Shown here one piece after another: positions 3,374 to 58,052 of a stretch of DNA of 64,000 nucleotides (position 1 is its first letter; every line of letters starts with the position of its first letter). Source of the DNA: Podarcis gaigeae (Eukaryota). Made by a program: the position numbers and the translations under genes. The stretch lies in the NCBI GenBank assembly GCA_964106915.2, contig OZ066915.1; one strand, given 5' to 3'. The notes under the pieces are model-generated. The model did not search any database. It saw only the letters and a program-made list of their open reading frames with translations, and was not told where the DNA came from.

Positions 3374-10326
<6,953 letters not shown>

Positions 10327-16271: not shown

Positions 16272-16314
<43 letters not shown>

Positions 16315-25300: not shown

Positions 25301-28300
25301 AGATCAGGTCCATGGGGGCGAAGGGGAACTGTCTCTGCTGCGGCCCTGATCTAGATAAGAGGCCCCATAGCTACTACAGGTAACCACAGGAGGATGGGAC
25401 CCAGGTTCAAACTAGGGCAGGGGTAGGCAACCTAAGGTCCGGGGCCCGGATGCGGCCCATTCGCCTTCTCAATCCGGCCCGCGGATGGTCCAGGAATCAG
25501 TGTGTTTTTACATGAGTAGAATGTGTTCTTTTATTTAAAATGCATCTCTGGGTTATTTGTGGGGCATAGGAATTCGTTCATCCCCCCCTCCCAAAAAAAT
25601 ATATAGTCCAGCCCACCACATGGTCTGAGGGACGGTGGACTGGCCCACTGCTGAAAAAGGTTGCTGACCCCTGCACTAGGGTTAAAGATTCCCTTCTCCT
25701 TCCTGTAGTTCCAGTCCAGTTTTCAGGAGTAGGAGTCTTAGTTCCTATTTACTATTTAAAAGTGAAATGAAAACCATCCTTTCTGTTTTGTCCCTGAGTT
25801 GTGGTCCCTCCAAGCAAGATGCTTGTGTAAAACAAGAGCTAATGCTTTAGCTTCCTTTTTCCTCTGGCTTCTTATGCTCTACCTATTGCTTAAATCTTTT
25901 GTCTTATGACTTCATTCTACAGTCACCACTTCGTGCCATTAAGGACTCCTTGTTTTTTTCGGGGGGGGGGGGAAGCAGATGGCTTCTTAAAAGATTAATG
26001 AAGTTGTCTATAGCAGTATATTTCTAGCAGAAATAATAAATGGGGACTGAGTAACTTGGGCAGCTGTGAAGGTCACATCAGAAAAAGTAGCATAAGTAGG
26101 TAGACCACAGATTATTTGCATATTTTTATTCATAATGAGCAAAGCTTATAAAATTTGCATAAACCTCGTGGCCGTCAAGTCATAGTTCTTGGACATTTCA
26201 AAACTCTCTATGCCTCTGTTAATGCAATTTGCAGGCACTCCCTTCCTAAATACCTTTAATTAGAAATCAGTTCAAGTGATTTAAGTGGAACATCATTTCA
26301 TGTAAGTATGCTTTAGGGAACAGTTCTAAAACTGGTGATATTTGTAATAATTCTGGAGGTGGCTAACAATTGACAGTGGTTTTAATCTTAAGGCTTAGAA
26401 ATATGGTCTTTCCTTGCAAACAAATATTCCCTGTGGAAACAAATATTATCCTGGTTATTTGTATTTTATGCAGCTTTTTATATCTTAAAACTAACTACCG
26501 TATTTTTCGTCCCATAAGACGCTCCGTCCCATAGGACGCACCTACTTTTTTGGGGGGGAAATAAAGGAATTTCCCCCCCCCTTTATCTCCCCCCCAAAAC
26601 CAGGTTGGGGAACAGTGGGATGGCGGCGCTGCGCCTCCCCGCTGTCCTCCGAGCTTGTGGGGCTGGCCGATGTCTGCCCGGCGCGAGGGGCGCTCTGCTT
26701 CAGGGCTACTCATGCGCCAGGCGGCAGGCTGCGGACACCTGCATGAAGCACGGGGCGTCCTCCGGAGGGCGCCTCGTGCTCCGCGCTGCAGGCTGCCGCC
26801 TGCAAGCCGTGCGCGCCCGGGGGATCTCCCCCCTCCCCGGGTGTGCAAGGCTTGCGGATAGTTTCCTGGAGCCTGGAGAGCGAGAGGTGTTGGTGCGCAC
26901 TGACGCCTCTCGCTCTCCAGGCTTCAGCGAAAGCCTGCATTCACCCCATAGGACGCACACACATTTCCCCTTCATTTTTGGAGGGGGAAAAGTGTGTCCT
27001 ACATGGCGAAAAATACGGTACATTAAAGAGTTTTGAATCCCCAGAAGATCAGAATTGCGACACAATCTCTCAAATCAAGAGATAGTATTAAATTGCCCCA
27101 GTTTTTTTGGGGGGGAATGAAAGAAATGGAAAGCTGTGAATGGGGCAGGATGATCAGTGATTTCCTATGCAATGGAGGGTATGCTGGTGGTTCACTGGAG
27201 GAAGCATTTAGAAGCAGTCCTGCCCTAACCACTCTCATTTCTTTTCTTTGTGGACAGTATTCAACTAAATCTTGTGCTAGCACAAGGGGATTTCACCTTG
27301 TTTCTTTCCCCCACATGCACCCCATGCCATCCCAAAATCCCTGAAGGATAGAGAAGAAGCCCCAGAACAGATTTAGAGGGCATGCAAGCGGAAGATGGGG
27401 AGAACATTTCATTGCACAGGGTGAAATCCTTGTGCTGACCTTAGCACTATGCTTCACTTGAGCTCCACCTTAGCACTATGTTGAATACAACTCAACACCT
27501 GCTAGATCAGTCAAGAACATAGCTCCCATTCCTGCAATCTTAAAAAATGTTATCCTAACCAGAGAGATTATCCCAGTTTTTTCCCATAACTAGTTTTGGC
27601 AGGAGGGTTACTTTCCATTCTCCCTAAACGTGTCAAAATTATTAACCCAAACTTTCCATCCATTCTTCTTTCTGTAGTAGTTCTTTTCAAATGAGTTTCT
27701 AAAGAAGCAAACCTCTTCTTAATCTGGCAAGTCCCTGGTTCACACATGATCTATAATGATGGTAGTGTCCTGGCTGGGTTTTTAAAAAACCTTTCTCCTG
27801 TCTACACACTTAAGTCTTCATGCAGCGAGAAGGTGACTAGCTACAGAATTCTGGCAAACTCAAGAGAATCAGTGACTGATGAGTGCCATCTCCACTAAGG
27901 AGGAGTTGTTAGCAATTGGTTGCAAGAAGTATTTGGGGAGAGTACTACCAGAAATAACACACACAGAAGCCCTAGCAAATGGTACAATTAAGGCAATGTG
28001 AACACATGATGTGGACAATGCAGATGAGTGCACTAGCTCTGAAGTTACTTGTTCTTTCCAGGCTTCTGAAATGTGCATGTGTCTGCATATAAACAACCTT
28101 CTACACTTTATACATTTGCCTTCCATTTGCTGTAAGATGACTGAAACAGTGGTGAAGGGAAGGGGTGGAGCAAGTAGTGCTAGAATGCTCATCCTACTGC
28201 CCTCCCTATTATTCTTAAATTGACCAGACTTTAAAATATACTTTGGACTAGAGAAGTATTTTCTTCAGTTCCAAAGTAGTAACGAGAGAAGAGCTAGAAG

Positions 28301-31300
28301 TTAAAATGTGAGACATAGGGACAAGACCTGGAAGGTGGGGATGGTTCTGTACATCCATCACAAATTAAGGAAGAAGCTTGTCCTTTTTCATACTCCATTC
28401 TGTCCTTTCCCCTTTTTTGGAATCTCAAAAGGCAGACCAGGGCAGTGCTACTCAAAGTGGTGGCCCATGGATTTGTGCTCGTCTGCAAACCATCAGCTGC
28501 TGGTCCACAACAACTCCACCACAGCCCAAGCTGGGAGGGATGTTTCAGGGACCAAATATGGTACCAGTTCCTGGCACATCAGTGGGGTGGGAGTTGCTGG
28601 TCCACCACATCAAACAGTTTGAGAAACACTGGACTAGGGAATGCTTTCAGGACAGCTATTTTTCTGCTGTCTGAATACTTGGCTTTCAATACTACTCATG
28701 AAACAAATCATCAGAGCTTGTGAAGAATTTCTGTAAAGGGGAACAGTATAGTCTGGCATTAAATTTAATATAGAGATAGTGTTCTTCATTGTGCCTTTTG
28801 GTTGAAGATCTTTAGGTTATACTACTGATATTTATTCCCAGCTCATCCATAACCAGGACAGCTACATGTACTATTTTTGTTAATCAATACGAGATTCTCT
28901 TAGCAAAATTCTTACACTGTGGTTTAAAAGAGGTCCTTCCTTCTCCTGCATAGCAAAGTGTTTTATTGAACTATGTGCTGCTTCAAAACCCAACCCTCTA
29001 GAGTAGATTTTCTGGGGGAACGAAGGAAGGCTTGAATAAAATCACACGTCTCTTCTGCCTACTGGAGAATCCTCTGAGAAGAGCTACACACATAGGATCT
29101 CTGGATTCAAGCTCTTTCTTAGATCTATAATGCCTTATTTGTCTTTGTCATCACTAACCCCCATTTTGCACCACTGAAAACATTAATTCTTGGGAAGCAC
29201 AAAAGGAATTGTCTGCTTAGCCCTAGAGTTGCCCTCCAAAGGGGCCAGGCAGCAGAATGTATTGATGTCCAAGTGGCATCCTTCTAAATTATTGGTCCTA
29301 AAGCAAAATTCTAAACAGAAAATGTGGGAATAAATATGCACAGAAGACAGGTATGAATATGGGTTGGTTGTGCACAGCATTCTTTCTAGTCTCTTGGCTG
29401 GACTTTTTATTGATTTAATACCACTAATCTCCATGTCTGCTGTTGGGAGGAGCAGAGATCAGTATGTAAATCAGTGCAGTTCCCATGTTGAATGTGAATA
29501 TTGAGTACGTGTACTGCATCCAACAACCAGTACCCTACAACAAGGCCTTATTCTTCAAATGTGACCATTTTTGTTTGTTTGTTTCTCCCAATTTTTCCTG
29601 GAACAGAATACAATGATGGCATTCGTGTACCAGGTTCTGGTCTTGTAACAGCATCATTGTAGTTTCTGGGGAAGACAGAAAAGGCAACCCTGACCTGCAA
29701 TAATGTTATCTGTGCACCAACCTGGTGCATAATGTGTGTGTACAGAATCAAGGAACTGAACCCAATGTTTATTTCATATGTACTGCTTAAATCTGTAGAC
29801 ACAGGCCAAGTCACAAAAATCAGACTTTTAATAAAATAGGTATGGAGGTTTTTTGAGTGGATTTTTTTTAAAAGTAGAAGTGTTTTCTGTTCCAGGCATA
29901 TCTAGAATTGCATTCAATTAGATAGGCTTCCCAGCTTTTCGGAATTAATAGCCCAATGTTGCAGGTGTATATGAGTTAATCCTCTTGTTCTTGCAGCATC
30001 AGAAATAGAGTCACTTGGGAGGTATGAGGCTCTGGTGGTGTCACACAACAGTGTGATGTCAACGAAAGCTAGCAGAAATTACCTAACTAGTTTTAGTGTC
30101 ATATATCCATAGACTTGGGTTTATTAATTGGGTCTTGTGGGGTTCCTGTGATTTGGGCCTTTCTGGTATTATGTGAACCACTAAGTTGCTGATACCATCT
30201 TTCCTGTTAGCATGCAGAAAGCGGTGAGGAAGATGCACTCCTGCAGTTGCTTTTAATCTACTGTTTAGATATGTCAGTGTAGAGTGGTATGATTGAGGCT
30301 TTGTGGTAAGCCATATGCCTTGAGCTTGTGCAAATGAAAAGTTTGAATTAGCTGCTATATATGTGCGTATGCATGTGTGTATGAAAGAACATGAGGGTAA
30401 CAGAAGAGCAATACAGCAAAAACAACGAGGTTAAAATGCATGCCATGTTGGTTTAGTTGAATTTCTTGCTTACGTTAGCTACTGAGATGCAGGGCCCAGG
30501 TGCTTAAGACCATACTGTACAATCCTATACATGTTGACTCAGAAGTAATTCCCATTGAGTTCCGTAGGGTTTACTCCCAGGTAAGTGGTTATGGGATTGT
30601 AGGCTAAATCTAGCAGGCAGTTTTCTGAAGTGTCCAGTTGATTACTCTCTTGGAAATAAATCCCATCAATTCACTTCCTTGTTAAAGTGTGTTTGTATTA
30701 AAGTGTCATATGCCAATCATTCCTATGCATTGCAAGGAGGTTGAACTAGATGATCCTCGTGGGTCACCCTGCAGTTCTATAATTCTATGATTGAATAACA
30801 GAAATGTTCATAAGCTGTTTTTAAAAACCTAGGTCAGTTCATCCCTTTGCTAACAAAGGAAGTACATTATTTTTAGAAATACTCAAATTTTGCATCAGAA
30901 TTTTAATTCTGTTATTGAGTTAGGCAATTTAAATTCTTTTCCTCAATGTGTTAAAATAGATCAAGTTTAATCCAGACATTATTTCCATAACCTGTCTGTC
31001 TGCACAAAACATTTATTATTGAAGTTTGCTAAGTGGAATCTGTGCTATGGTGCCTCATTAATCTCCTTTACTTCTTCTCAAACTGGGGCTTCCTGCTTCC
31101 TTGACATGAAGACTGTTGCTGTGAGGAGATAGGAGGTATGAAAAACCAGACAGTCAGTAAACATGGGGTGTTCTCGGCACACTTCATTGCAGAATACATG
31201 GTAGTAAAATGTTTGATAGGCTCAACTTTAAGTTCAACTGCAGCTTTAACTTGCCACTTGTTATAGTTGTGAGATACAGCAATGTATTTATGCTTAGGAA

Positions 31301-34300
31301 ACTTACACACATTTATAGATGCTATATGTATTAGTATGCCAGCAGATTCTTCTTCTTTTTAAGCGAGGAGTTCCCCATTGCCCATTGGCTACAAAAAAAG
31401 CACATGTACCTAATTTTATCTGCATGTCCTTACTCTCCTGCATTCACACATTTGGGCTCACAGATACATGTGCATATGCTAGCATACTCCTATATGCGCA
31501 CTGATCTACACATTCTTTCTCATGCCCAGAATGTTTTCTCAGTTGCATGCAGACCTGCACATCTCCCTTCAGTAGGCAACAGTATGGGCTTGTTTTTGCT
31601 AGTTACTTTTGCTGGATTTTGTGACCCAGCTACATCACGTAGTGGTAATTCAAGCTACAGTCAAGGCTGTGTTCCTGCCCATTTTTATTGAACCGTGTAC
31701 ACATCCTATGCATGTTAGTGCTTCAGAATAATGAGGTGATATATTTTGACCCTTGACCTAGCAATATTATCAAAAATATGAATACATGGGAAATATTTTG
31801 CGGCTAGCCACCAGCATTAAAGGAAGGGGTTTTAGTATAATTGTAAAAACAAGGGCATTTGTAGACCAAAGAAGCTGTTTGTCAGATTCAGACTTACTCA
31901 GTAGCTCAATTTGGTGTTAAGTTCAGAAGCCCTGTCCAATGACTAATCTATTGATATTGCAATATTAAATGACATTGTTTATGTGAAATGTTTCATGTAG
32001 GGAAGAATATGTTACATTTTTTGGTTCTGGTTTATTTTGGATGCTTTCAATACAGTAATACATGTTCTCTTGCCGACAAGAGTGTTTTTTGTGTGTTTGT
32101 TTATCTCTCAGGTAAGCGCAGAGCACTGAAGTTGAATTTTGCAAACCCACCTTTCAAATCCACAGCGCGATTTACTTTGAACCCTGGAGTTCCTTTTCAG
32201 AATCCACACATGTGAGTATAAAGCCAGAAATTCCACCAGATGGAACCATTTTGAAGTAGGAAGATAAAGCACTTTCCTTTGTCACACAAATTTTGTAGGC
32301 AGTTCAGAAGTTAAAATTGTAGTCTGGACTGAGACGTAGGATGTTCTGTTTATGTAACATTTTCTCATGTATTTTTGGAACTTCAAATAAGCTGTTTTAC
32401 CTAAAGGCTTAAAGCAAGACTACTCCTTTGAACTGTACCAAAAAAAAAGTCCTGTCATTTGCTGGCAAGTCATCTCCATATGGCAGAGGTAGCTTACCTG
32501 TAGTCCTCCAGATATTATTGGACTACAAATTCCCATCAGCCCTAATGAGCGTGACCAAATGTGGCCCCACGCTGCCAACCACAGTTTAGCCACTCCTGCC
32601 TTATGGTTAATCTCACTCACGGACTGCATAAACCTATGCCTGCTGCTTTTCAAGTTTGCAAAGTTTTTATTCCTGTATTTGTTTTTAAGATATTTGTGTG
32701 ACACATCTTAGTTTTAAAATTGAGAGGATTCTTTTTTTTTAGAAATCTAAGAGGTGGTGAGAAGTTACTAGAACCATGTAAGTTTCCAAGAAAGGTGTTA
32801 CAGACAGCCTTATATACAGATTCAGTGTAAAGTGGAGTATCCAACAATTGGTTGTTTAATGCAGCAGAATGTCTCTTGAAATACAAGCCTTGTGTCCTCA
32901 GATCCACCAATCTGGACTGATGGGTAACTTCTCAGGCTGTGCAGTCAGCATCTCCTTTATATTCTCTTGTGAGGTTTTTTAAGTCCGGCAGAGTAAAAAT
33001 CCTCAGAGCTTTGTGCCTGTCATTCCTCCAGTTGCTTGTACTTCCTTTGGACAATTCTGCCATGTATGTGTGTCTGTATGTTGCGGCTTTGTTCATATAG
33101 CTCAGAGCTTTCTATTTCCTACGAATATATCCGTTTCATTTCCTTATTTAGAAACTCTTCCTTGTTTTGATTCTAAAGCTATCCAAGTAATTATAGATGG
33201 ACTTTGGAAAAGTATTCCTGTTACTTATAAGGTCAGTTCTGAAAACCAGAACATGCAGATATTTCAGTAGACATTCTTCTAAGATGTCCAGTTTCTCATC
33301 CAAAAAGAAGAGAAGCAAGGTTCAGCCTGCAGAGTTCTGGCATCCAGCAGTACCACCATTTATAAAATACCATATTAATTTAAGGACTTAGGACTTACTC
33401 CCCATGTTAGAATATATAAGCTAGCTGGACACAATCTTTTCACAATAACGTCATAGGTGCTTTCTCTTTGTAGTGGTTCTGCACAACTTTTGTCTTTCAA
33501 CTTTTTCTCTTTGATAGATTTCACCTTCATAAGACCTTTATTCTTAGTAAGTTAACTCATCACCTTCTAGTGACTTTCTTTAGTAGTCATATTTTTCATC
33601 CAGTGACTTTCTGAACAGGAATTTCTGTAGATAATAGCTGTTCTTGTCTGGCAGTTCTTCTTGCATCTAATAATAAAATCCCTAATTTCAGGCTCATCAG
33701 GCAGCTGGTGGTATTGCTTTGAACAAGACTATTTTGATAAAGTAGGTTGGACAAGGGGAGAAATAATTTTTTTCTGCAACAGCAAGCTTCCCAAATATTG
33801 TGTTAGGGTTTTTTCTAGACCACCCACTGTATAGATAAATATATCTTACATTTTACACTGAACATCATCAATAATCTGTTTTGAGAATAAACTTGTTATG
33901 TAGTCTGTGAAAGGAAGTCTGTTTCTATTATAAAATTTGTGTTGGGTAGTTCTTTTGAAATAGGAAAGGCTTGTTTTATCCATTTGTTCCCCTCACCTTT
34001 ACAAACTCCTCATTTAGTATTTAGGCTGCAATCCTGTACCTGCTTACCTGGGAACAAGCCCCACTGAAGTCAGTGGGACTTACTTCTGAGTAGTCTTGTC
34101 TAGCATTGCACTTCGAGTGTTCAGTGGTTAATTTTTTATCATCTTATGTCTCAGATTTATGAAGGTTTTCTTAGGAGCTGGTATGTTAACAAGTAAGGAT
34201 CATAACATTTTAAAAAATCTTAAATTCTTTTTGAAAATCTTTTGCTAATGTGGGTTTTTCTAATATGTCATTCTTCTTCCAGACACCTTTTCTTGTGTTG

Positions 34301-37300
34301 GATATTTACTTTGTTACATGGTATGGAAGTCCATATGTGCTGTGAATGAGGCAATTTGCTGTTATTGGATTAAATCTTGTTTTCCAGTCATTGTAGATAG
34401 TGCTTTGTTAGTTTGTTACTATTCTTTATTCTATGAGTTGGTTGTTATTCTTCATTCTGTATAAAAGAGCAGCCTAAACATAACTGTGTTGATTAGATTT
34501 TGGGGATGTAGTTTGTCATCCCATTCATCTAGATGGGTAATGCTGACATTTCAGAGAGGATAGTTTCTCCTGTGGAGGCTAGGCATTTGGGCTCAGTTTT
34601 GAAGGCTTTATCCTATTTTTCTAAACGATTGAAAATGTTGGACAATTTGCTTGATCTTTGTGTCCTTAAAGCTAATGGCAGTCATTGGTTATACTGCTCC
34701 TTACCCACATTTAATTGCCCCTTAGGCATACTTTGTTGGGTTCACAGGTTGTGTTCAGGGGCTTCAGTGATGGAATTTTCAGATAAGAAATTGCAGCTTT
34801 TATTACAGGCAGGTTGAGGAAAGGAATGTATCTTCTTTAAAGCTCTTCATTCCAAGATTTTCTCTGTCCAGAATTCAACTGCCCCCCAGAAAACAGCTAT
34901 GGAGGAGATTACCAAAACACATTGTTCAGGTGAAAAGTGGTTTCAGAAGGGGATAAATATACTTGGTGATAAGTATCAATGTGTGCTTGCGGGCTTCTCT
35001 GTTTATAAGGAAGAACTGGTTTTAGCATAATGTTAGCTTTCTTTCTGTAGAAAGCTGTGGCTACTTTATTCAAGGTGAAGCTGCCTGGTTTGTTCTGCAG
35101 CTAAATGTAAATTAGGCATAAAGCTTTGTGGAAAACTGCTGCCAGTGTGCCCACCACCAGGTTAGAGTTTATTCACACTTTATTGCACCGTCTTGTGCCT
35201 TCTCCTGTCACCTTGGCTAGTTAAGGAGCAGAGTTCTTTATGTGTGTTGTAAAAGTTACTTTATGTGCTAACATTGTGATTAAAATGATGTTACATACAT
35301 GTAATTGTAATATGTCTGTATTGGTCCTATAATTTTAACTTGATAAATTTAAGACTAGTTACTCTGACTTGATGTTTTTTTGGTGTGTCTAGTTCATTGC
35401 CAAAGCCTGAATTAGATCTCCTGAATTAGCAGTTACCTCAGATGCCACATGTATATAAAGGCAACAACTTATTTGCGCCTGTTTGTGCGCATGCGCATCA
35501 AATTGACCTGGAAGTGGCTGGAAAAGGAGGCTTATTGGGGCAGAGTGGGCTTATGTGTGCTCCACCATCGTGCACAGTAACCTGGCATGCAACCCCCCCA
35601 CAAATCGGGGGTTGCCTGTAATTCTTTCTTCTGTGTAGTATAGATTGGCAGAGATTCTCATTTTGTGTTTTGTAAACAGTGTAGTACTTCATTTTCATAG
35701 TTTCACCATAGAATATTAACATAGCAACAACTTCCACAGTGGGAAGGTTCACATGAGTCCTATGATAGATCAGTATTGTTACTACTCACTCTTCCATTTC
35801 ACCCTCCTTTTTTTCTACCTCTGGCTTGGCTTCTTCTGATTTGGATGGATTAGGGTCAACTTTTTCCCTAGATTGATTGTAGATTATTCTGAAAGTTTGC
35901 TGAGGTGGTAGATATACAGTCCTCCATGCACATGAGTCTGTTGCTTAATTCTAGGTAAACTATACAGTAAGATACAGAATGCACAATAACATCTGTAGAC
36001 CCTAGGGGCTGTTCTGGTACTGTGGTGATTTATGTTTGACTCACAATTGTTGCAGCCCTGGTTGGGTATTTATATCATCTATGGAGCCCTGTTAATGAGT
36101 CCTGGAGGCTGCTATAGTGAACCACATTGAGACTAGAAATATTTCATGTTCCTTGGTGCTTTTCTCCCATATTGTAAAAGATCAGACATAAGAGTTTCCG
36201 CTTCCCAAAGGCACAACTGGGAGATACAACACTTTGCCAGAACAGCAGCAGGTATGCTTCTTCCCTGATGCAGTGCAGCTGTGTGTGTTGCACAGTGGCT
36301 GCAGAGAGTGAGTGGGGAAAGCTTGTACATACATGGCTTTCTTGACAGTAAAAGGCCAGGTAAGAGTTTTTCCCAAGCTGGTTCTGCCCTGTTTACTGAG
36401 TTTTAGCTGCTTCAGCTAAAGCAGATTGGTAAGCTCTGGCATTCATTGGGTGGAATCTACACACAGGTTAAAAACGTTGTGAAAATGCTTTTTCTAAAAT
36501 CGTTTTGAAAAATGCATGGAATTTGCTATAGCTCACAGTCGGCATCTAGTGTCACAATTGTACATTATATTGCACTTTACAACACATTGAAAACATTTTG
36601 TTTGCAGCTGTATAGCTAAGTCCTCCAGATCTCTAGACTGTATTTCTTTGCAAGAAGTGAGATACAAACAGATACTTTCAAGCTGACCATCACCTTGTTA
36701 CATTTCATCAGAAAGAATTCTGCTTAATTCTTGAACCCCAATAGTTCACTGTTCCTGCTAAGTCTTTTACACGGCACTTTTCTTGCTATACACTATAAAA
36801 CTGACAGCATTGAGGGGAAGTGAATATGGCTGGAGAGCTCGAAAGGGGTTTGCAAGTGATCCAGATCAACATCTTTACTACGTTCATAAGTCATTAGTTT
36901 CTCTTTGAATACAGAATTGTTGAGGCCATCCAGGTTACTTGCATGTAGAGGAATAAGTTACTGCAGTTGGAGCATGGTTTCCTAAGATAGGCACTAAGAT
37001 CCAAAGTAAACACTTCAAAACTTGATGAAGTTGAACCAAAGTTCTTGATTCTGAAGGCTGCAGCATGGACAGATTCTCAAATGGGATGGCATTGTGTTAA
37101 ATCTTCAGGTCTTAAAAAAACAAAATAAAATCAGAGCAAGGGAGATTTGGCCGTAATTAAATCATTTCTGCTGGAACATGACTTTAATCCCGAAGTACCT
37201 AATGATTCTGTGCATCTAGAATAGAAGAGGAAGCACTAGACTGGCAAGTTCCCCCTAAGCTTTCTTCTTCAGAGTACCTTTGTTGAACAGCCCCAGAATA

Positions 37301-40300
37301 TTTTAAAACTCTAGCTGGAGAACTGCCCCCCATGTCCTTTTCATGCAGCTTCAAGCTTCCCCTCAAGGGTTGGGGCAGGCACCTTCCAACTCAGGTTTTT
37401 CTTTTTCCTTGACGAAGGTTCAGGATTTAGAAAAGTAAAATCTGCAGAGAGAATTAATTCCAGTACATTTTTTTTGACAAGAATTAATAGAATTATTATA
37501 TTTGAGTAAAGACTGTCTCCATGCCAACCATTACAGTTCACTATATTTCACAATAGAGATCGCCGGAATGATTATCAGATATGGTGAGCTCATCTCCACT
37601 GTCTTAGACAAGGTTCCTTATCATTTTACTCTTCCGAAGGATGCTTTCATATACACGTTGCTTTAGGAACAGTGGTACAACCCTCGCAGTTGCCTAAGGC
37701 ATTATTTATCGTGTGTATCTCACCTTAGATCCTTGAAGAAGATGCCTTAAGGACTTCGTTTCTTCTCTAACTTTTTTGAATTTCTAGGAAGGGTCATTGT
37801 ATCCACCCCCCATTCCTACTGGAAACCTCAACACCACTGAGAGATCAGAATAATTTACTTTCTCTCTTCTTACTTGTGAGCCTCTGGTTGGATTTTCCTT
37901 TTTTGTGGGGGGCAGGAATCCTAAAAAGCAGATCAGAGGAGCAGCTTGGCAGATCTCTGTGTGCCCCTCTCTGTCTCTCCTTAATTAGCAGAGGACTCAA
38001 GGAGATTTTGATGCATCCCTTTTCCTAACAGTCTTGACTTGACCGTTGGTTTTTATGTATGTAAACATACTGAATCTTCCTCCCCTGTTTGTCCTGCCCC
38101 TGCAAAGGGGGAGGTTTTGTTAGTGTTAGAAGAGGAGATTTCTTACCTGGAAATACTTGTGAGAGATTCGGATCCAGAAACTTCCTTGTTCCTCACACAA
38201 TCACAGAGTGGACAGTGAAAGCTAGCTTCTAGCTCTTCCAGTTTCATAGGGAAGAATTCAGTTCACTCCAATCTAAATAAGTAGGGTAATAGTGACTTCT
38301 CCTGATTGGTGGATCCAAGACACAAGCACTAGTTTTCAGGTAAGAAATTTACCTTTATTGAAACAATATGATGAAGCAATGTAGTGGTAAACAATGTAGC
38401 AAATTGTGACAAAGAAGGTCAGTGGCACTAATTAGTTGATTTTAGCTAGCAATTTTATTGCAGGTATGTAGTTCATAGGACAAAAGGAAATACTGCACCT
38501 GAAATTAAGGATTGCATGCTATTCCTAAATGATCTTACTTGGAGGTAAGCCCCATTTATTTCCAAGGGATTTACTCTTAGGTAAGGTGGCATTGGATTGT
38601 AGCCTTCCATGGCTTTCATGCATTAGTATGAGTGGTTTCAAAAGGGCTTTAAATGAACTGCCACACACTTTGCTTTTTTTCCTTTTTTCCAAAAAGAGAG
38701 GTATAGACTAGCCCTTAACAAGGAACTGAAATGTGCTCATTTTGTATATAAAAGGCAGTCTGTCTTTTCAGTTACTATGTGTGTATGTGTTATTGTGTCA
38801 TGTGATAACAGCACTGTGTTTTCCTGTCATTTTTACAACTCTTTCCTGGCTGAAGTGATACACAAGCAACAATGGGTAGTAATCACATTGCCCCGTTCAC
38901 TTTCAAAAGGAGAGAAGCGGAGATGATCGTGAAACTTTCCAGCAGGCTACAGTAAGCGTAACTGTCTGTTAGCCCCATTGTCAGATATTTTCATAATAGA
39001 AAAAGCAAAAGAAAGAAAAAGGCATGAACACCAATATAGATCCTTGCAGAAATTTGTCATATTATGAGTGAATTAATATATATATATATTTAAATTAATT
39101 ATTAAATACTTTCAACATATATTTCATTATTATTGTTTAAAGCTTATTGCTGCATTCGTATTAGCAATTCCCAATGTTCTGTCCCAGCTGACTGTCATTG
39201 GCTCTAGAAAGACAGTGTATTTTTTTTAAGAGAGTACTGGTATTCAAAGGGTAACTCAGTGTTAGTTTACAAAAATCTCTCCTTTTAAAACCATAAATAT
39301 TTAATTCTCAAGCATGGTTGACCATAATGGATGGAGTTGATGCAGGTGTTATAAGGTTGTTGCATATTGCCTCCAAAAAGCCTTCACTGATAGAACAGCT
39401 CTAAAACCTGTGAATCTAGTTGTCTTTTGTGAAGTATTATTTCATTTTTGTAGCTGCCATACTTCCAACACCTATTGATCTGTAAAATAGCCCCCCCCCC
39501 CTCAACAATTAATGGACCAGTGAAAATGAAACGTATGCTTCTGGTGAAGTAAGCCTGAGGCACAATTGAGGTAGAATCTACACACTTATAAAAACCATTC
39601 TGGAAACGCTTTTTTAAAAGTGTTTTTTTTAAAAAAATACATTGAATTTTCCATAAGGCTCACCATCACCAACTAGTGTCACATTGTATATTGCACTTAA
39701 AACACACTTAAAATGTTTTATTTACAGCTGTATAGATGAGTCCCAAGGCAACTGAAGAGTTGCCGTCCATTGCACGGGTGTTAGATTTTGTTCTGAATCT
39801 TCTTAATTCATAAGTAATTCATATTGGCTTTGAGTACTTCTAAAACATTTTAACATAACATTATAGCGAGTCGTGGAGGATACGGAAACATTCTGAGAAA
39901 ATCAAGTATTTTCATCAATTTGGCGGAGTTCATCAGGTCCAAATTTCTGAGTCGGGCAAGGCACTACATTTCTGGGTAACTAAAATGGTGTGACCTTAAA
40001 TCTACTTGCCCAAACAATGCAAATAACTGTGCTAGTTCCATGTTTACCCTTCCAGGAGAATAAAGAGTCTTCTCTAAGGTCCCCTGCCTCATACTCACTG
40101 ACAAGAAATAGTTAAACTTGTAATTTAGGAAATTAAACCAATCCTCATATAAAGGAAATTGTATTTTTATACCATATTTTAGATCTGACTTAAAACTCCA
40201 TAAAAAGTTATAATAAGAGAATCTATTTCCTTAAAATATTTTTTGCTGAATGTGAAATTGTAACTTAGTGGTTTGGGGTAGCAGACTGCAGGCCTCTGGG

Positions 40301-40667
40301 GACTACTTTGTTATTTTCCTTAGACCCCATGAACTGGAGACCTATAAAAGACATAAACTTTTTATACCTATAAAAGACATAAACTTATAATTGAAGTGTG
40401 TTAAGCCCAGGAATTTGCCTTTACGTTTTGGAACAGAAAAGAGCCTCTAGTGCTTCCTTACAAAAATATACTTTGTCATACATCATCCCCCTTCCCCCAG
40501 CTTGGTTTCCACAGGGATCATTTTGTTGCAACAGTTGAAAGCCAGTCTTTGTCAATCTACTTCACATCACGCAGGGATCTGTCAGTAGATTCCAATTTAA
40601 CTACTCTGCTATCCCAATCAGATTATTGGACTCATCATGTTCAAATCACTGATTTTGTTATGTCATC

Positions 40668-40709
<42 letters not shown>

Positions 40710-43700
40710 AATCAGGCACATCACTGGCTCTGCTCCCTGGGCATCCATGCATAAGATTGGGGTCTCATGCCATGACTATGATGCTTTGCCTTGAAAAGTG
40801 GCAATGCTTACAGGATGCGTTTACATCGTTTGATATATTTCTTTGTTGTGATGAAGAGGGACAGGCAATTTTGTCCCAAAGCTTTTCTGCTTCAGTTTTT
40901 AGGCATCTGCAGCAGTATGGATGTAATTTACCAGCACATCTGTAATACCTCTTGTGCCACTGCTGGAAAATCTGGGCAAAGCAAACAAGAATGATCAAGC
41001 AGGATTCAAGAGTGCATGTTGTCTTGCCAGGGCTGCAATATTACTAGATGCCTATCCTCTTGGGAAAGAAATACTGTCTCTGATTGTTGGCTGTTGATGG
41101 TCTCACTCCTGTGAAATTATTTCTGTGTCCTTTCAGTTGCTGGTATTTCGTTCATTTTTTTTTTGTCATACTATAAAATGTGGCAAATGATTTTACTAGC
41201 GTAAGCACTTACAGGTGTTGCAATAATGGCTTTCAAGCTCCATAGCACTCCTTCTCATGGTAAATCTGCACCCTTAGCATGAAGGCCTTTAAAAATGTTC
41301 TTTTGCCATAGATTTGACTAATTGTTCCATTGTCTGTTGCAAAGTGTACTGTTATAACCACAGCACGTACACTTATTTTCTGTAGACCTGGAAAGAATTA
41401 AAACTGGTTTCTTTTGTTAATCTATAAATTCTGAGAACTGTTGTAGTGAGAATTGCCCTCCATCCAGTTGGCTTTCCAAACCCTTAAGAGCAAGGTAGTG
41501 CTATGTTATCTTCCTGTACTAGAATATTGCTTTGTAGCCTTGCAGTATGCTGCTGTTAAGGTTTTACTACTCCGCAGAGATCCTGGGCTCATAGATCTCT
41601 CATTCACAAGGACCCCTTCTACATAATGCCCTGATTGGTGACAATCAGGAAGCATTAACGTATGATATTTCTGATAAGGGGATTTAGAGCTATTGTGGTA
41701 TTACCGTAAAAACAGCTCTTTCCCCCAGTACTATTAGTCTGTGTGGAACAGTAGTGATCAGAACTGGGATCCCACGGGCAATGTGCGATTGGCAGCACTG
41801 ATCACCTGCAGGTGCATTTGTACAGAAGTCCTCTGTGCATAATTGCCCTGTCAGTATTTCTTATTGAGTCACAAACAGTTTGTTAAAGCTTTATCATCCT
41901 TGGAACAAGAATGCTAAAGTTTGGGGTTTTAGCCGGAGCTGTATACCTGTCCCAAACCTTTGAGTTCTGTTTCAGCAGCTGTCTAGCAACTTGTATGCCT
42001 TCTAGATTGGCCTTATTAACTAGCATATGGTTCTCGTTCTACAAGAAACTGAGGTATATCCTTGTAAATTCCCCAAATCTGATGGCAGAAGGTAAGATGG
42101 AAAAAATGAAATACTCCCCTCCAGAGAGTCGGAAACGTTAAAAACAATAAAACAAACAGGCAATATGCCTATAGAAAAAGAACGGTCTGCTGTGAACCAG
42201 CAGCTGCACTAATCAACTAATTTTGTCTGAATTAGGTTTAAATTCCTTTAGCTCCATGCAATGCATTACCAGCCTCAGTCACTGATTCTGTTAGGACTGA
42301 AATGGAAATGAGAGATGGGAGAGGTGTTCAGGTTCTTGTCTGAACATGTAAGCACCAAATTGTGTAGGGATTCTGGGTCCAGTGTACAAGCCCTGCCCCC
42401 AACTTCATCATGCACACTTCCCTCATTCAGTCCCTGACCTTCTCTTGTGTAGGGAAGGTTTGTGTAGGAATTCTCCTCATGTGAATGCAAGAACAACTCT
42501 CTTCATGATCAATCATGTACAAGTGAATGTGGGTAGAATCCCTATAGAAGAGGGGAAGGTTTGGAGACTGAGCAGGGAAGAGGTGTGTGCAGTGACATTG
42601 AGGGTCAAGCTTGCATGCATGCTTCTGTCCCTCTACGTGATTTGGTACTTTTGTACTCATGCCTATACACAGTTGGAGTTGGGTGTTATCGACTCCTGAT
42701 GACATAGCACTCCAAAAACACTGAATAATCTTGTGCAGTGGTTTCTCGTAGATGTCAGACACCATGAGGCACAGAATTGAACTTTTCTCCCTTGTTGGAT
42801 ATTCTTCAGTAATGTTAATTTAAATTTGATATGTATATTTTAAACACTGTTGTGCACCACCCTAAAATGATGTTAAGAGTGGTACAGAAATGTGTTGTAT
42901 ATATATTAAGCTCTGCTTTCCTGCAGCTTTCCTAGCAAAAGGACAGTACATATTGAAAATGAGGATTTGTTCTGGTGTTACTTAAATACAGTAACCTTAA
43001 ATGGATTTGTGTTGATGTGTAGTGACATTGACTTAAACCTTCGCTGTGGACAGAACCCTGATTTACTTTTGTATACTTTGGTTTATAATTGTATTTTGAG
43101 TGCTACTATGACTTCTCTCTCCTTTCTGCTCCTTATCAAAACCAAAAGCTTCTGGTAGCTAAATTAATTTCTTAGTATTTAAATTTTAATATTTGGTTGT
43201 ATGAAAAGGAAAATGGAAGTAGTTTGCACACACAACTAAATTAGGCAGATCTTCTAAGCATCCAAATGATCCTTTCACCTAGGTATCTGAAGGGTTGATT
43301 AATGATAGAATCAGAAACGGTATCTGCCTTTGACTTTAAGATAAAAATATTGGAATTCCACGGAAACCTGTTAGATATTGTTTTATTCATTACTTAACCT
43401 AGAGGGAGGTGGGGTCCTAGCTGAGCAGCTCAGGCTTGTGACAGTTTGGCCACATCTATCCCAAGGTTATCAGGGTGGGGACAAGCCATTTGAATTCTTT
43501 GACATGTCACTGATGTTCAAGTCCTGGGAATCTTGTCTTGGCAAGATGGTGAGCTATGCTCTTGTTTTATATGTGTGTTATTTTGGGGTATTTAAGTAAC
43601 TAGCCATAATGCGCCCCCCAAAAAATTAGTCATACTATGATGATGTCAATATTATTTGTATGAATTTTCAGTATCCTAGGAGTAGCAGACTTAGGGAGCA

Positions 43701-46700
43701 GTGTATGTTTTTGTAAACAGGTTCTGGATGTTCAGCCTTGTAGCTGCAGAAGACAATTAGCAGGACATCAGTTTACTTTTTTGTAGGATCTGGGGTGTCT
43801 GTTTCCCTATAGGTTGTTTTTTCTCAGGTTTATTTAAAAGCACGAGTATTTCATATTACCAGTATCCTGCAATGTGCTAGAAGATTGGGAGCAATTAATG
43901 CCCAACACCTGTGTAATGTGATTTCTAAGACAAATTGCTTTATCTTTAGCAGGTGCAAATGGCAAAGCTTACAATTGAATTTCTATTTATTCTTTTTTGT
44001 TTCAGCTTCTCTCAGCTTCTAAATTCTTTTCTTTTCCTTTTTCATTCATTAACATTTTGTAGAAAGGTCTTGTAGGTGGTTTATTTATGACACAGACAGG
44101 AATTCAGAGATGCTGATAGATTATTTTTTTGCTCGGTATTATGTTGCCTCTATATTTATCTTGTATAGCTGAATCTATATTAAAGATGACATACCAAGAT
44201 CAGGGGATGATGGAGAAAGGGAGAGAGATACTTCATCATCTTCAGAAATTGGTGTTATTATGTAATGCCAAGCCTTTGTATTGCACCGTTCGGTATTTCC
44301 TCTTTTGTGGCAAACTGCAGTTGTAAGCCATGATCAAACCATGGTTTGCATTTCAGATTGCAGACAAACTTTGGTTTGCACAAACTATGTTTTTGCCTAT
44401 TTGGATGTAACTGCAAACTGGTTTGCCACAAAAGAGGATGTGTAACAGTGTGCAATGGGAGGAAGGTGTGTACATGCCCAAGGCTCTGTTTGAATTGAGC
44501 CAGTGTCTAGGAACTAAAAAGCCTTAGATCAAGCCTTTTTGCTATCTAATATTCTTTCATTGGTTTTAGAGGGTCTTTCTTGAATTCATGTTTGGACTTA
44601 TTCCAAAACTAGTATTGCAGTGCTTTTGTTGAGTTTGCTAAGTAATTTGATTAATTTCCCATAATTTTACTTGAGTGATTACTTCTGAAGTATTCTCTGC
44701 TCTTACCATAATCACAGTTTGTGATAAATGTACAAATATCCACATTAAATTTTCAGCTATCAGGTTTGACAAGTTCCTTGGTTCAGGGCTGAGAGGAAGG
44801 GCTTTAAAACTATGAAGCACTTCTAAAATTGCAGCTGAAGAGCCCAGAGTTTAACAGTCCAATCCTAAACATGCTTAATAATAATAATAATCCTACTGAA
44901 TTCTTTGAGACCTTCCTCTTACAAAGTAAGCTTCATTTTCAAACATTTGACAGTGATGGGTAGAAGATACTGGAGACTTTCACATTTGTCTTGAGATGAA
45001 CACTGTTCATCAAAAATAGAAAAACTGTATTTCTTCATGCAGAGCCACTTGTCAGCAAGAAAAGAAACCTAACACAGCTGTGGAAGTCTGTTCGACCCAA
45101 TGTAAAAAAATCCTTTATTACTGACGCAAAATTCTGCACACTTCTTCTAGCCTTAAAATATGCACCAACGGCTTTGTGGCTTTTTGACTAATCTTCTTTT
45201 ACTTCAAAAATACACTGACAGAACATTGGCTCTGCATGTATTTTTGGAGTTAACATGATCCCTTCATTTTTTTCTGTTTTCTATTAATATTTATAAACTC
45301 TTCTCGGAAACCCAACAGCCACAGGTATGGGTTTTCTTTATGGTGTTATCAATGCAGGCAATAAAAGGAGAAAGACAATCACCAGCCTAAACTTAACTCT
45401 AGAAGAATGTAGTTGCTTTATGTTACGTAGCATAACTAATATTATCCTTCTGCATTTCATAGGAATATAATAGTTTTATGCAGGAATTTATAAACAACCA
45501 CAGAAATAGACATACAGTTATTGTAATATAAGAGACAGATGGTCTTGATTAATAGCTAAAAAAAAAATTTAGTTGCTTTAGGTGCAATTGTTTACAGTAT
45601 CCTGCCCTGTTACCTCCATCTAGATTAGATCCTTCATGGAAAGTATATTATTGCATTAGCTTTATGTTCACTACTCTGTATAAATGCATTTAATGAGTGC
45701 TGTAAGAGAGAGAAAGTTTTCAATTGATATAAAATGTGGCAAAATTCCTTCCCAATTTTTTTTTTGGCAGAGAGAGACTGAGAACACACAGCATTGAATC
45801 ATCAGGAAAATTGAAGATTTCCCCTGAACAACATTGGGATTTTACTGCGGAGGACTTGAAAGATCTTGGAGAAATTGGACGAGGCGCTTATGGTTCTGTC
45901 AACAAAATGGTCCACAAACCAAGTGGGCAAATTATGGCTGTTAAAGTAGGTGATGCCCGTAATTCTTGTACTTTCCAACTGCAGGGGCAATATATAGTGG
46001 ATAGTTTAATATCCATCCATCTTGCGCTCAGCAGTTGTTTGCTTTCCCCCGCTATCTGTATATTTTGCCTTGTAGTTTAGTGTTATTAAATACTTAACTG
46101 GTTTGTAAAATTATGGGTTATAAAATTTAAGGAGAACATCTAATATATGTAAGCTTCTTTTTAACACAAACACTGTATATATACGGAGACTCTTTATCTC
46201 TAGGTTCCTGGTTTTAAATCCAGCTCAGGTTTATTATTATTAAATGCAGTTTTGCAGTGCTTTGTCAGGGTGCTTTGTGAAACAAGCTAGTTGCCTTGCT
46301 ACAGTAGTTTTCATTTTTCCTACTTATCTACTTGCACCAGTGTGTTTTCAAACTGCTATGTTGGCAGGAGCCTCGGACAAAGCAACAGGAACTCACCCCA
46401 TCATGTGGATTCAAACTGCCGACCACTCATTTCTTGTAATACTCTTTTAACAACACTGGGCTATAAAATAACTTGGAGTGAAGGCAGAATTGAGCCCTGT
46501 ACTCAGTCCAGTTATCAGCAAATATACTGGCATGTTTCATAACATGTAGGACACTAGTCATCAAGTATAATAGGAATAGAAGAGGGCATGACCAGTATGC
46601 TTTATGGAATATTAAATGTTCTTCACCCTGCTTTTTCCAGTATCTGTGTCTGTGAGCTACATAAGTGACTTCTGGCCTAGAAGGAATCCATTCTGTCTTG

Positions 46701-49700
46701 TTCCCTACTCTCCCTGAATTTGTAGGGTGGCACATGCCATATTTTTTTTCTGTGTAGCCATGCCTCTGCTGAGTCCTGTTGAGGGTCAATATTTGGGTTT
46801 TCCATAGCAACAGATTAAGGTTTGTTACCAAGTAAATAGGTTGGTACCAACAAGGAGTTGCATCCAGTGTGGACTGCTTCACACTTTGATTAGCCAGGTT
46901 TCGCTTGTGTATGCTGCAGTACAGCACACAAAGTATGAATGCAGAGGTGGACATTTGTAAACACAATGGACAGGCTACCTGAGAGACACATCACATTGCA
47001 TCTCCCTGATACATCTTTAATGGGTCCTTGGAACATTTAAGGATTCACATAACTTCCACGTTGAGCTCAGCAACTGTCATACATTTATCTGTATGATAGA
47101 CATAATTGCCATATTCAAACTTTGCTATTATGGTGATGTTTAATCCATTCCCATGTATTCAGTAATAAATACTAAATACTAATAAATTATGGGAGGAATT
47201 CAGCATTCCTCTATTATAATGATTCTCTCAGCTTGCCATACAGGACGATCTCCTCCCTGCCCCCAGGTATGCTTTTCTGGAGGTTCCCACAATCACTGGA
47301 ACCAGTTTGATCTTCCCAGGATCACTCTACCTTGATTTGTGCTCAGCTTGTGTTTTCTGTGGGAAGTCTTGATAATAGGTGGCTGTTTTATGGTAAAATG
47401 ATGCTGGAAAAAAGATTCTATATAGATGGCCAGTAAAATAAAAGTAAAAGAAAAGAAATAATTCTAAAATTCCATAGACAGAATTCTACAGAAAACAGGA
47501 AGGTCAGGCAGATACCAGCAGCCACTGAAGAAAGGGAAAAATGGTAAAGAAATATTAGGAGAGGAATTCTGGAGAAGAAAATGGGAGCAAAGTCAGAAAA
47601 CTCTGGAGATAAACTGCGTTTTTGCAGGGCTCTTGAAATCAAGGAGAGCACAATGGCAAGTGCTTTGCATATTTGGTCATGGGATTCCTTGGGAATACAA
47701 AGATTGGATAATGTATTGTATACAAAGGCTAGGAATAGTTCCAAGCTGAAGGGAATTGTGAAGGTTAGAGGGCATTGGCCTATATGCAGTTTAGGTATTG
47801 GCCAGAGAGTTAAGAAACACTGGAAAAAGGAAAAACAGTTGGAGTGTGTTAGATTTGCAGTTGTGTTTTAGAGTTCCCATTTCATCTTCTGTGTAACAGG
47901 CAGTTCTTTACTTGGATCATTCTGTTCTGCTCATCATTTCCTAGGCAAACAGTTGAGCTGCTTACTATTTGTACTCTGGAATGTGTAATGGCTTTACAGC
48001 TGTAGAATAATTGTGCCCAGAAGAATTGTATAGTGTCTCCAGAACAAAGCAGAACCGTCCCATGCCTGCTATTATAACTTTCTCAAGTGGCTTTGGTCAG
48101 CATTTGTTTGGTGGGGGAGGGTATGGTATTTTTGTTACTCTTAACAGTTAGCATATAGAGATCCATATTGTTATGCTATAACTGGGGATATTTTTGTAAA
48201 GTGTCTTCTTGGGGCCACATTACGTGCTAATGTTCAAAGCATTTTTTATTGTGTGCTTAGAATTGGCCTTTTTCTTTAGAAAAGCAGGGGTGTGGGTGTT
48301 CATGCTGATTTTCAATTGGGGCTGGAAGAGAGGTTAGCTGTTTAGCCCTGCACTGTTTTCCCTGGAAAATCACTCTATACAGAAGCTTTTTTGCCCCAGA
48401 AGGTGATAGCAAATTGTGGGTAGTACTGGAGGAGGTTGCCTAGAAAATAGCAATGGGTAAAGGATCAAAATCTGGATTAGGATTAGGATCCACTGCAGTT
48501 GACTTTTCTAAAAGGAGAGACATGACACAGTGCCTAAAAACACTTTTAATATGCCATACAGTTTGGCCCTTAGTCACAGATTGGCTACCAACGTGTCATA
48601 TTCTTTATGGAGGGGGTGGGGGACCTTAGGCCAAGGGACCAAATATGGTCCTTAGTAATCTTTCCAGACCATGCTTCCTCTCCAAGCCACACCTGTGGCC
48701 AGCCTTGCACTGCGGCCTACTCAAATGTTTTTGTTAGGCTGGAATGTGTCCCATGAATTGAGTCCTGAACTGAAGAAAATACTGCCTAATAAAAGGGAAT
48801 ATTCATCCTCAAATATGGATCGTTGCATGATAATGATAGCATAAGTCAGCCTTCCCCAACTTGCTGTCTTCCTATCATCCTAAACTACTGGACAAGGTGT
48901 GGTGGTTAGACTTCTGGACTAGTACCTTGGAGATCAGGTTTGAATCCTTCCTCAGGCATGGAACTCTTTGGTTGTCCTTGAGCTAGTTGCTGTTCTTCAG
49001 CCTAACCTTCCTTACAGGTTAGAGGTTATTTATTTTTCTTAAAAATCACCTGAGCTGATTAAAATGGTTCAGATGACATGTCAAAGCCCATGGGTTTGGC
49101 CTGGAGTATGGAAGGAGTTAAGCAGGCGCTTTTGAGCAGTACATGGTTCATGTGGGTGAGCCCATAATAAGATATTAATGTGACATGCAAACACAGCTAG
49201 TTCTGTTTACTTTAATTATGATATCTCTTCCTTTCTTATTCTTTCAGAGAATTCGTTCGACAGTGGATGAAAAGGAACAGAAACAGCTTTTAATGGATTT
49301 GGATGTAGTTATGCGAAGTAGTGATTGCCCATATATTGTTCAGTTTTATGGAGCACTCTTCAGAGAGGTGGGCACTCAAAATCTGCTTAGTTTGTAACAG
49401 ATTTAGTTAATACGTTTTATGACGTTTTAATGGGTAATGAAGCACATTAACTGAAGGGCAGGCAGTAGACAATTTGCAAGGGTAAACTAGTTTGGTGGGG
49501 GAGATGCATGTAAAGAAAACGTTAGCACTGCTTTATTTCTAAAATGCCTATTTCATTTCAGTGCTTCTCAAAAGGTTCATTATAATCATGTGTTATACAC
49601 TTGTGGCTTTCAAACTTTCTACCTTTTATTACATTTCACTTTTATCACATTCCTCCTCTTAAGGAGGTTGGGATGGTGCACATGGTTCTCCCCCATTTTT

Positions 49701-55700: not shown

Positions 55701-56726
55701 TCAACTGACACAAGTAGTCAAAGGAGACCCACCACAGCTGAGTAACTCAGAGGAACGGGAGTTCTCCCAAAGTTTTATCAACTTTGTCAACTTGTGGTGA
55801 GTATGCCTCGCTCTGGGGCTCTTCAGGGCATTAGTAAGTGGTTCTGGCTCAGGAAATGGTGCATTTTTCCTCCACTAAGGATGAAAGTGGGTTGGGTGGA
55901 GAAAGCTGCAGTATGAAGAGCCACTTGCAAGCCTTAAATTAATGCCACATTTCCTGCATGTGTGATGGAAGTGGTGGCTTGGAGAGATTTAGACATGTCC
56001 TTCCCTAGTTGAGTTGCCACTCAACGTGAAGGCAACACAGATCTTCCTTACTGACTTCTCACATTTGACAAATAGCACTGGGATGGTAGGGAGGCCTTTC
56101 CTCAGGCTGTGTCTGTAGCAAGACCTTTTGTAGCCCCTAATTACATCTTGGAGATCCGTTTGTTGTTGCCTCCTCGATATATGATAGAGGGAGCAGCGAT
56201 TGCATCAAATAGAGTGCACACTGTAAACTGCAGAATATATCTTTGTAGTGCCTCCTGCTGGGAGTTTGCCTACCTGCAGGTTTGTAGCTGTGATATTTTA
56301 AATGAATGTTGATAAGCTGTGTTTGCCTCATTGCAGCACAATTATTACATTGTCCTGTGGATAAAACGAAGTGGATCTGAGTTGGTTGCTCTTGTTACAT
56401 TTAGCACACCAGAATGGGCTCAGGAAGTGTTATGTGAGCAACTTAACATCGTTTAGTATATTACTCTACATCAGTGGTGATTTGGAGCCTTGCAGGAGCT
56501 AGAATAGTTAAAGATACCTTTAAGATGAAACAATTGCCTTTGAGGCTATAATCACACAAAAGAGAAAGCGGAGGAGTGGTATTTAAAGGAGAATGATCAA
56601 TGTACATTTTACAAACTGATTAAAGCAAGACAGTCGCTTCAAATTCACTACAGTGTTGATGTGCTGCCACCTGTTGGTTTGACATTTTTCTGCAGTGTTT
56701 TTAAAATGCAGTTAATTACCCTCTTG

Positions 56727-56776
<50 letters not shown>

Positions 56777-58011: not shown

Positions 58012-58052
<41 letters not shown>

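What the first reader, a model, noticed from the sequence alone, without database searches (positions are those of the whole stretch)
38745..38957. Hidden internal promoter and alternative first exon that could give MKK4 a different docking N-terminus
Seen in sequence, in MAP2K4 intron 2: TATATAAAAG (38745), Inr-like TCAGTT (38768), an in-frame TGA (38851), then acaATGG (38872; same Kozak context as the canonical start). This opens [26 protein letters not shown] and ends at CA|GTAAGC (38951/38952). The donor is phase 2, which is what exon 3 needs, giving ...[19 protein letters not shown]... and a 353-aa protein with an intact kinase domain. Several CpGs are retained in an otherwise CpG-poor intron. 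Established: MKK4 binds JNK/p38 through the exon-2 D-site, consensus (K/R)2-3-X1-6-hydrophobic-X-hydrophobic. Inference: this isoform would lose KRRALKLNF but carry [11 protein letters not shown], which also fits the consensus, so promoter choice could swap docking specificity. Alternative reading: a 96-nt in-frame cassette exon (38856-38951, weak AAG acceptor) that adds 32 aa and is also stop-free. The exon is too short to appear in the ORF track. I cannot tell whether it is already annotated.
Basis: partly seen in the sequence, partly recalled or inferred. Interest (0 to 1): 0.85.

Follow-up and report, generated by a model that had tools for sequence, protein, structure and literature searches.

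The report
Conserved cassette exon in lizard MKK4
The proposed hidden promoter in the lizard stress-kinase gene MAP2K4 is really an old optional exon, already present in automated annotations, that adds 32 amino acids between the kinase's docking site and its catalytic domain instead of replacing the docking site.

Summary
38856-38951 is a 96-nt in-frame cassette exon between exons 2 and 3 of a lacertid MAP2K4. RNA reads join exon 2 to 38856 (5 reads, plus a contig from another study) and 38951 to exon 3 (3 reads). The identical 32-aa insert is already in RefSeq models of Podarcis muralis (XP_028572940.2) and a skink; orthologous inserts are in turtles and birds, and its last 42 nt in crocodilians and monotremes. 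The promoter reading fails: the TATA consensus is absent in Rhineura, Pogona, quail and platypus; the ATG is squamate-only (Leu or Pro in birds and turtles); the residues before the ATG are conserved as protein; no CpG lies upstream. All but one of the insert-bearing proteins retrieved keep the exon-2 D-site, so there is no docking swap. Most likely effect (inferred): the D-site-to-kinase linker grows from 24 to 56 residues, which should retune JNK/p38 activation. Not excluded: a squamate-only second p38-type docking motif, or rare first-exon use (one ambiguous unspliced read).

The parts
38856..38951 (+). 96-nt in-frame cassette exon (phase 2 to phase 2), adds 32 aa between exon 2 and exon 3 of MAP2K4
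   Evidence: RNA loose ends at 38856 equal the last 30 nt of exon 2 and at 38951 the first 18 nt of exon 3; identical peptide in P0269 Podarcis muralis and P0273 Tiliqua
38910..38951 (+). 42-nt 3' part of the exon behind an inner acceptor (AG at 38908-38909); the oldest coding part, used in monotreme and crocodilian models
   Evidence: P0279, P0285, P0152, P0156-P0158, P0292 carry only the last 14 residues; the platypus long form has in-frame stops; no lizard loose end was listed at 38910
38789..38855 (+). Conserved upstream intronic block: UG-rich stretch, pyrimidine tract and weak AAG acceptor
   Evidence: 60-nt upstream flank 90% identical to quail and 83% to platypus, against 55-75% and 45-65% for constitutive exons
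38952..38995 (+). Weak donor (ACA|GTAAGC, lowest score of the gene's donors) and conserved downstream block
38905..38937 (+). Squamate-only loose D-motif-like string (KRR, three-residue spacer, M-x-V-x-L)
   Evidence: matches the loose consensus only in squamate proteins; V is Q in birds, turtles, crocodilians and monotremes
38872..38874 (+). ATG: internal Met of the cassette in squamates; CTG (Leu) in quail
38745..38773 (+).
   Evidence: no TATAWAWR in the 250 nt before the acceptor in Rhineura, Pogona, quail or platypus; no pile of read starts
32112..32211 (+). MAP2K4 exon 2, carries the canonical D-site; upstream splice partner of the cassette
45771..45945 (+). MAP2K4 exon 3, start of the kinase domain; downstream splice partner
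14098..58731 (+). Whole MAP2K4 coding span, 11 canonical exons, 386 aa

Best explanation
This is a regulated, frame-preserving cassette exon of amniote age in MAP2K4. Shown: transcripts splice exon 2 to 38856 and 38951 to exon 3; the exon-2 D-site is kept; the protein gains 32 residues, so the stretch from the D-site to exon 3 grows from 24 to 56 residues. Shown for relatives: both included and skipped forms are annotated in the genus Podarcis. Inferred: weak splice sites plus strongly conserved flanks and silent sites mean inclusion is controlled by RNA-binding proteins (a UG-rich tract suggests CELF-type factors; untested). Inferred: the insert works mainly as a longer tether between the docking motif and the kinase core, changing how efficiently docked JNK or p38 is phosphorylated rather than which one docks. 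I put the cassette structure at about 0.95 and the tether-length mechanism at about 0.5.
For: Junction reads at both ends (identity of the loose ends checked). Annotated isoforms with the insert in lizards, an amphisbaenian, turtles and birds. Residues upstream of the ATG are conserved in birds and turtles, which a 5' UTR would not require. Flanks are more conserved than those of any constitutive exon, and silent divergence to quail is 0.07 against 0.31, the usual signature of alternative exons (own knowledge). For the mechanism: in MKK6, adding or removing 10 linker residues halves p38alpha signalling (10.1101/2022.07.04.498667); MKK4 linker residues outside the D-site take part in MAPK binding (PMC8391806); sharks, amphibians and rat carry sequence-unrelated inserts of 33-38 aa at the same junction, which points to length over sequence.
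Against: The last 14 residues are almost invariant from platypus to birds, which could mean a sequence-specific role, though the DNA constraint could equally be splicing signals. No functional data exist for this isoform. The AlphaFold model was unusable (mean pLDDT 38).
Confidence: 0.85

Rival explanations
1. Hybrid exon: in squamates the cassette is sometimes also used as a first exon from a start near 38765-38770, giving the 353-aa protein that begins at the squamate-only ATG and lacks the exon-2 D-site.
For: The ATG in good context is kept in all squamates seen. Depth in run X22 implies one unspliced read over about 38765-38914. Hybrid first/internal exons are common in human transcriptomes (10.1101/2021.05.27.446076).
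Against: One read, equally explained by pre-mRNA (intronic reads and contigs are abundant upstream in X21, X1, X9). No TATA consensus in Rhineura or Pogona. No upstream CpG. No retrieved protein starts at this Met, though only a fraction of the 382-member cluster could be read.
Confidence: 0.07
2. The cassette is internal, but in squamates it adds a second MAPK docking motif next to the kinase domain (tandem D-sites, as with the 16-aa exon of MKK7 gamma), most likely of p38 type.
For: The squamate string fits the loose three-hydrophobe consensus quoted in PMC8391806. The changes that create it are squamate-derived (quail and platypus agree) and mostly non-synonymous (8.5 against 1.5), followed by near stasis (99% DNA identity among squamates).
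Against: Spacer of three residues with two acids fits neither JNK class (NFAT4 or JIP1 type). Absent in birds, turtles, crocodilians, monotremes. The loose pattern matches 8-10% of random 27-aa intronic frames. It would sit only five residues before exon 3, probably too short a tether to serve catalysis (inference).
Confidence: 0.15
3. The conserved thing is the RNA element; the peptide is near-neutral filler, and inclusion serves mainly to tune transcript output (in platypus the long form carries stop codons and would be decayed).
For: Low silent and raised replacement divergence; platypus long form has in-frame stops with conserved acceptor DNA.
Against: The frame is open in every sauropsid examined, and the last 14 residues are coding in monotremes and crocodilians too.
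Confidence: 0.2
4. Chance intronic open frame and donor, not a real exon.
For: Such combinations are frequent by chance.
Against: Junction reads and conservation to quail and platypus.
Confidence: 0.01

Closest known systems
RefSeq predicted MAP2K4 isoforms of sauropsids, e.g. Podarcis muralis XP_028572940.2, Tiliqua XP_066470793.1, Rhineura XP_061472423.1, Coturnix XP_015735483.1
   Same: Same exon, same boundaries; peptide identical in Podarcis and Tiliqua.
   Different: These are pipeline models; no paper on the exon was found in the searches made.
MKK4 delta (Map2k4delta, Haeusgen et al. 2014, cited in PMC8699841)
   Same: In-frame alternative exon in the disordered N-terminal region of MKK4 that keeps the D-site.
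   Different: Delta is the short exon before the D-site (own knowledge; its apparent counterpart is 23365-23397 here). This exon lies after the D-site, is 32 aa, and was not seen in any therian protein retrieved.
MKK7 alpha/beta/gamma N-terminal isoforms (PMC8699841)
   Same: MAP2K whose docking region is remodelled by alternative processing; the 16-aa gamma exon is a regulated cassette.
   Different: MKK7 alpha truly lacks the docking region; here the D-site is kept and a docking role for the insert is unproven.
Amphibian 38-aa and cartilaginous-fish 33-34-aa MKK4 linker inserts (e.g. Xenopus tropicalis NP_001107157.1)
   Same: Same exon 2/3 junction, similar length; the amphibian exon is also phase 2 to phase 2.
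   Different: No sequence similarity above shuffles (p 0.08-0.98; no blastn hit); present in every amphibian protein seen that also carries exon 2, so perhaps constitutive there. Homology not established.
Hybrid first/internal exons (10.1101/2021.05.27.446076)
   Same: Would be the class if starts near 38770 exist.
   Different: No start cluster and no upstream CpG island seen.

Membership tests
Conserved alternative cassette exon | Spliced to the upstream exon at its acceptor and to the downstream exon at its donor | tested here: met
   loose ends, matched to exon 2 and exon 3
Conserved alternative cassette exon | A skipped form also exists | tested here: inconclusive
Conserved alternative cassette exon | Frame-preserving and stop-free | tested here: met
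   96 nt, 418-aa product; open in Rhineura, Pogona, quail
Conserved alternative cassette exon | Weak splice sites with conserved intronic flanks and silent sites | tested here: met
Alternative first exon with internal promoter | Cluster of capped 5' ends upstream of the exon | tested here: inconclusive
   No pile of starts at low depth; one ambiguous unspliced read; no CAGE available
Alternative first exon with internal promoter | No splicing into the exon from upstream | tested here: not met
   5 of 6 reads in X22 enter from exon 2
Alternative first exon with internal promoter | Conserved core promoter or CpG island | tested here: not met
Alternative first exon with internal promoter | Conserved start codon | tested here: inconclusive
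   ATG in all squamates seen; Leu or Pro in birds and turtles, absent in platypus
MAPK docking motif (D-site) | Loose consensus: basic residues, spacer, three spaced hydrophobic residues | tested here: met
   Squamates only (consensus)
MAPK docking motif (D-site) | JNK-class spacing (NFAT4 or JIP1 type) | tested here: not met
   Spacer of three residues against two or none (definitions)
MAPK docking motif (D-site) | Conserved across species that have the exon | tested here: not met
MAPK docking motif (D-site) | Binds the MAPK docking groove | not testable with these tools
   needs a binding assay

The most novel reading that the evidence does not exclude
In squamates an ancient cassette exon gained, in one burst of substitutions, both an ATG and a p38-type docking motif, and is used in some tissue as a hybrid first exon, producing an MKK4 whose only docking site is the new one; the cassette form would then carry two docking sites.
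Probability: 0.05. Interest if true: 0.6.

Novelty: already known. Interest (0 to 1): 0.25.

Why it matters
As it stands, little: the exon is in public gene models. The useful residue is comparative. Sharks, amphibians, reptiles, birds and monotremes all have a long-linker MKK4 made by an extra exon at this junction, with unrelated sequences of similar length, whereas the therian proteins retrieved (rat models aside) have only the short linker. Since linker length tunes MAP2K-MAPK pairing (MKK6-p38alpha), these natural isoforms offer a ready test of whether splicing shifts MKK4's balance between JNK and p38, an open question for the only MAP2K that serves both pathways.

Tried and rejected
No PDB sequence matches the peptide. 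AlphaFold on a 33-row alignment gave an unusable model (pLDDT 38; a helix drawn over the insert at pLDDT about 30 is not evidence), so no fold search was run. Turtle, alligator and Tasmanian devil loci were too long to fetch, so therian DNA was not examined; human sequence was not looked up. Homology with amphibian, shark and teleost inserts was tested and not found. A remembered likeness of the insert's 3' end to helical stretches in MEK1 and MKK7 N-termini was not tested and is not used. Conserved RBFOX sites were looked for: the one GCATG at 39022 is not kept in Rhineura. Literature searches found no paper on this exon. The scan's earlier notes held nothing on MAP2K4. The joined model was not sent to any search tool; exons were joined only inside one script to count lengths and stops.

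Full report
Setting. The window holds a complete MAP2K4 gene on the + strand, 11 canonical exons from 14098 to 58731 coding 386 aa. It is a lacertid lizard close to Podarcis: exon 1 matches P. lilfordi fully and the upstream frame matches a P. muralis model at 95%.

Observation. Joining exons inside a script, only to count, gives 353 aa for the first-exon reading and 418 aa for the cassette reading, both without stops. The motifs alone prove little. TATAWAWR occurs 110 times in the window. An ATG, open frame and phase-2 donor at least this good occurs 11 times in intron 2 and 10 times antisense, though only this sense one has both Kozak context and a TATA upstream. The donor is the weakest in the gene. 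The CpGs lie in the exon and donor, none in the 490 nt upstream.

Annotated relatives. A search with exon 3 returned a protein whose residues before exon 3 resembled the 3' end of the candidate. Following it showed a 32-aa insert between exon 2 and exon 3 in RefSeq or Ensembl isoforms of turtles, duck, goose, quail, turkey, ostrich, songbirds, a skink, an amphisbaenian and Podarcis muralis. The P. muralis (XP_028572940.2) and Tiliqua inserts are identical to the window's. Of the insert-bearing proteins held, none starts at this Met and all but one keep the exon-2 D-site; the exception is a manakin model that begins six codons before the exon. Platypus, echidna and crocodilian models use only the last 42 nt through an inner acceptor at 38908-38909, preceded by lineage-specific sequence.

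DNA conservation. In quail and platypus the conserved block is 38789-38995: pyrimidine tract, acceptor, exon, donor. TATA and Inr fall outside it. Rhineura and Pogona align further upstream, but both have extra bases inside the TATA string, and none of the four loci has a TATAWAWR within 250 nt of the acceptor. The 60-nt flanks are better conserved than those of any constitutive exon (quail 0.90 and 0.75; platypus 0.83 and 0.73), and silent divergence to quail is 0.07 against 0.31 for exons 3-10, with replacement divergence 0.12 against 0.003. That is the pattern of a regulated alternative exon (own knowledge). In platypus the 96-nt frame has stop codons, so only the inner part is coding.

RNA. 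In raw RNA run X22, five reads have loose ends before 38856 that equal the last 30 nt of exon 2, and three have loose ends after 38951 that equal the first 18 nt of exon 3 (checked). A contig in X9, another study, has the same exon 2 joint. In X21 the depth equals three reads covering exactly 38856-38951 (weak: they may be copies, and their mate orientation is opposite). No place with many molecule starts was found. One X22 read, inferred from bin depths, covers about 38765-38914 unspliced; its start is near the Inr-like string, but intronic reads and contigs are common upstream in the other runs, so pre-mRNA explains it equally. Exons 2 and 3 are each about 6,800 nt away, beyond the 6,000-letter limit, so the skip junction and inclusion level were not measured, and the joined model was not searched.

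How it most likely works. Shown: inclusion keeps the D-site and lengthens the stretch from D-site to exon 3 from 24 to 56 residues. Established: the MKK4 N-terminal domain is disordered, docks both JNK1 and p38alpha, and residues outside the motif join in (PMC8391806); in MKK6 a change of 10 linker residues halves p38alpha signalling (10.1101/2022.07.04.498667). Inferred: the exon retunes activation efficiency through tether length. Comparative support: sharks, rays and chimaera (33-34 aa), amphibians (38 aa) and rat models (38 aa) carry inserts at the same junction with no similarity to this one. Whether these are independent gains or one old exon diverged past recognition is not settled.

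The docking claim. The KRR...V-K-L string fits the loose consensus only in squamates; birds, turtles, crocodilians and monotremes have Q for V. Its spacing fits neither JNK class, and the loose pattern hits 8-10% of random intronic frames. Quail and platypus agree at these codons, so the string is squamate-derived, and it has been nearly frozen since (99% DNA identity in Rhineura and Pogona). A second, p38-type site in squamates is therefore possible (0.15) but would add to, not replace, the canonical one.

Comparison and novelty. It works like other in-frame alternative exons in MAP2K N-termini (MKK4 delta, MKK7 gamma; PMC8699841) and meets the tests for a conserved cassette exon, apart from the unmeasured skip junction in this species. 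It fails the tests for an alternative first exon. It is already in public gene models; no paper describing it was found.

Verdict. Real exon, wrong headline. Already annotated, functionally uncharacterised. Interest 0.25. Most novel reading left open: squamate hybrid first exon with a new docking motif, probability 0.05, interest 0.6 if true.

Noticed in passing
window 23365-23397: 33-nt in-frame alternative exon between exons 1 and 2, 97-100% identical in quail, platypus and squamates; appears to be the MKK4 delta exon (identification from memory).
   Followed up: partly
window 31112-31135: 24-nt in-frame exon with three adjacent cysteines just before exon 2, seen in Podarcis and Rhineura models; a notebook entry gives 27 nt in error. 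Turtle models have a different 11-aa exon at this place.
   Followed up: partly
L002 27044-27127 and 32657-32698 (platypus): Monotreme long-linker form is built from a lineage-specific exon plus the 42-nt inner part; the 96-nt form has in-frame stops although its acceptor DNA is conserved, a possible poison variant.
   Followed up: partly
L005 1911-2024 (Engystomops): Amphibian 114-nt phase 2 to phase 2 exon at the same junction, no similarity to the amniote exon; present in every amphibian MKK4 retrieved that also carries exon 2.
   Followed up: partly
proteins P0261, P0328-P0341: Cartilaginous fishes carry a conserved 33-34-aa insert at the same junction, unrelated in sequence.
   Followed up: no
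window 38920-38931: Six substitutions in 12 nt separate squamates from both quail and platypus, then near stasis within squamates.
   Followed up: partly
window 13442-14097: An upstream in-frame stretch in the CpG-rich promoter is used as a long N-terminus in a Podarcis muralis model (P0269) with a different first exon ending near 13819; probably a pipeline extension.
   Followed up: no
window about 9829-10401, minus strand: First exon of a neighbouring gene resembling TMEM220 (from memory), head to head with MAP2K4 across a CpG-rich region.
   Followed up: no
window 4409-5247: Fragments resembling the 3' end of a LINE reverse transcriptase open frame.
   Followed up: no
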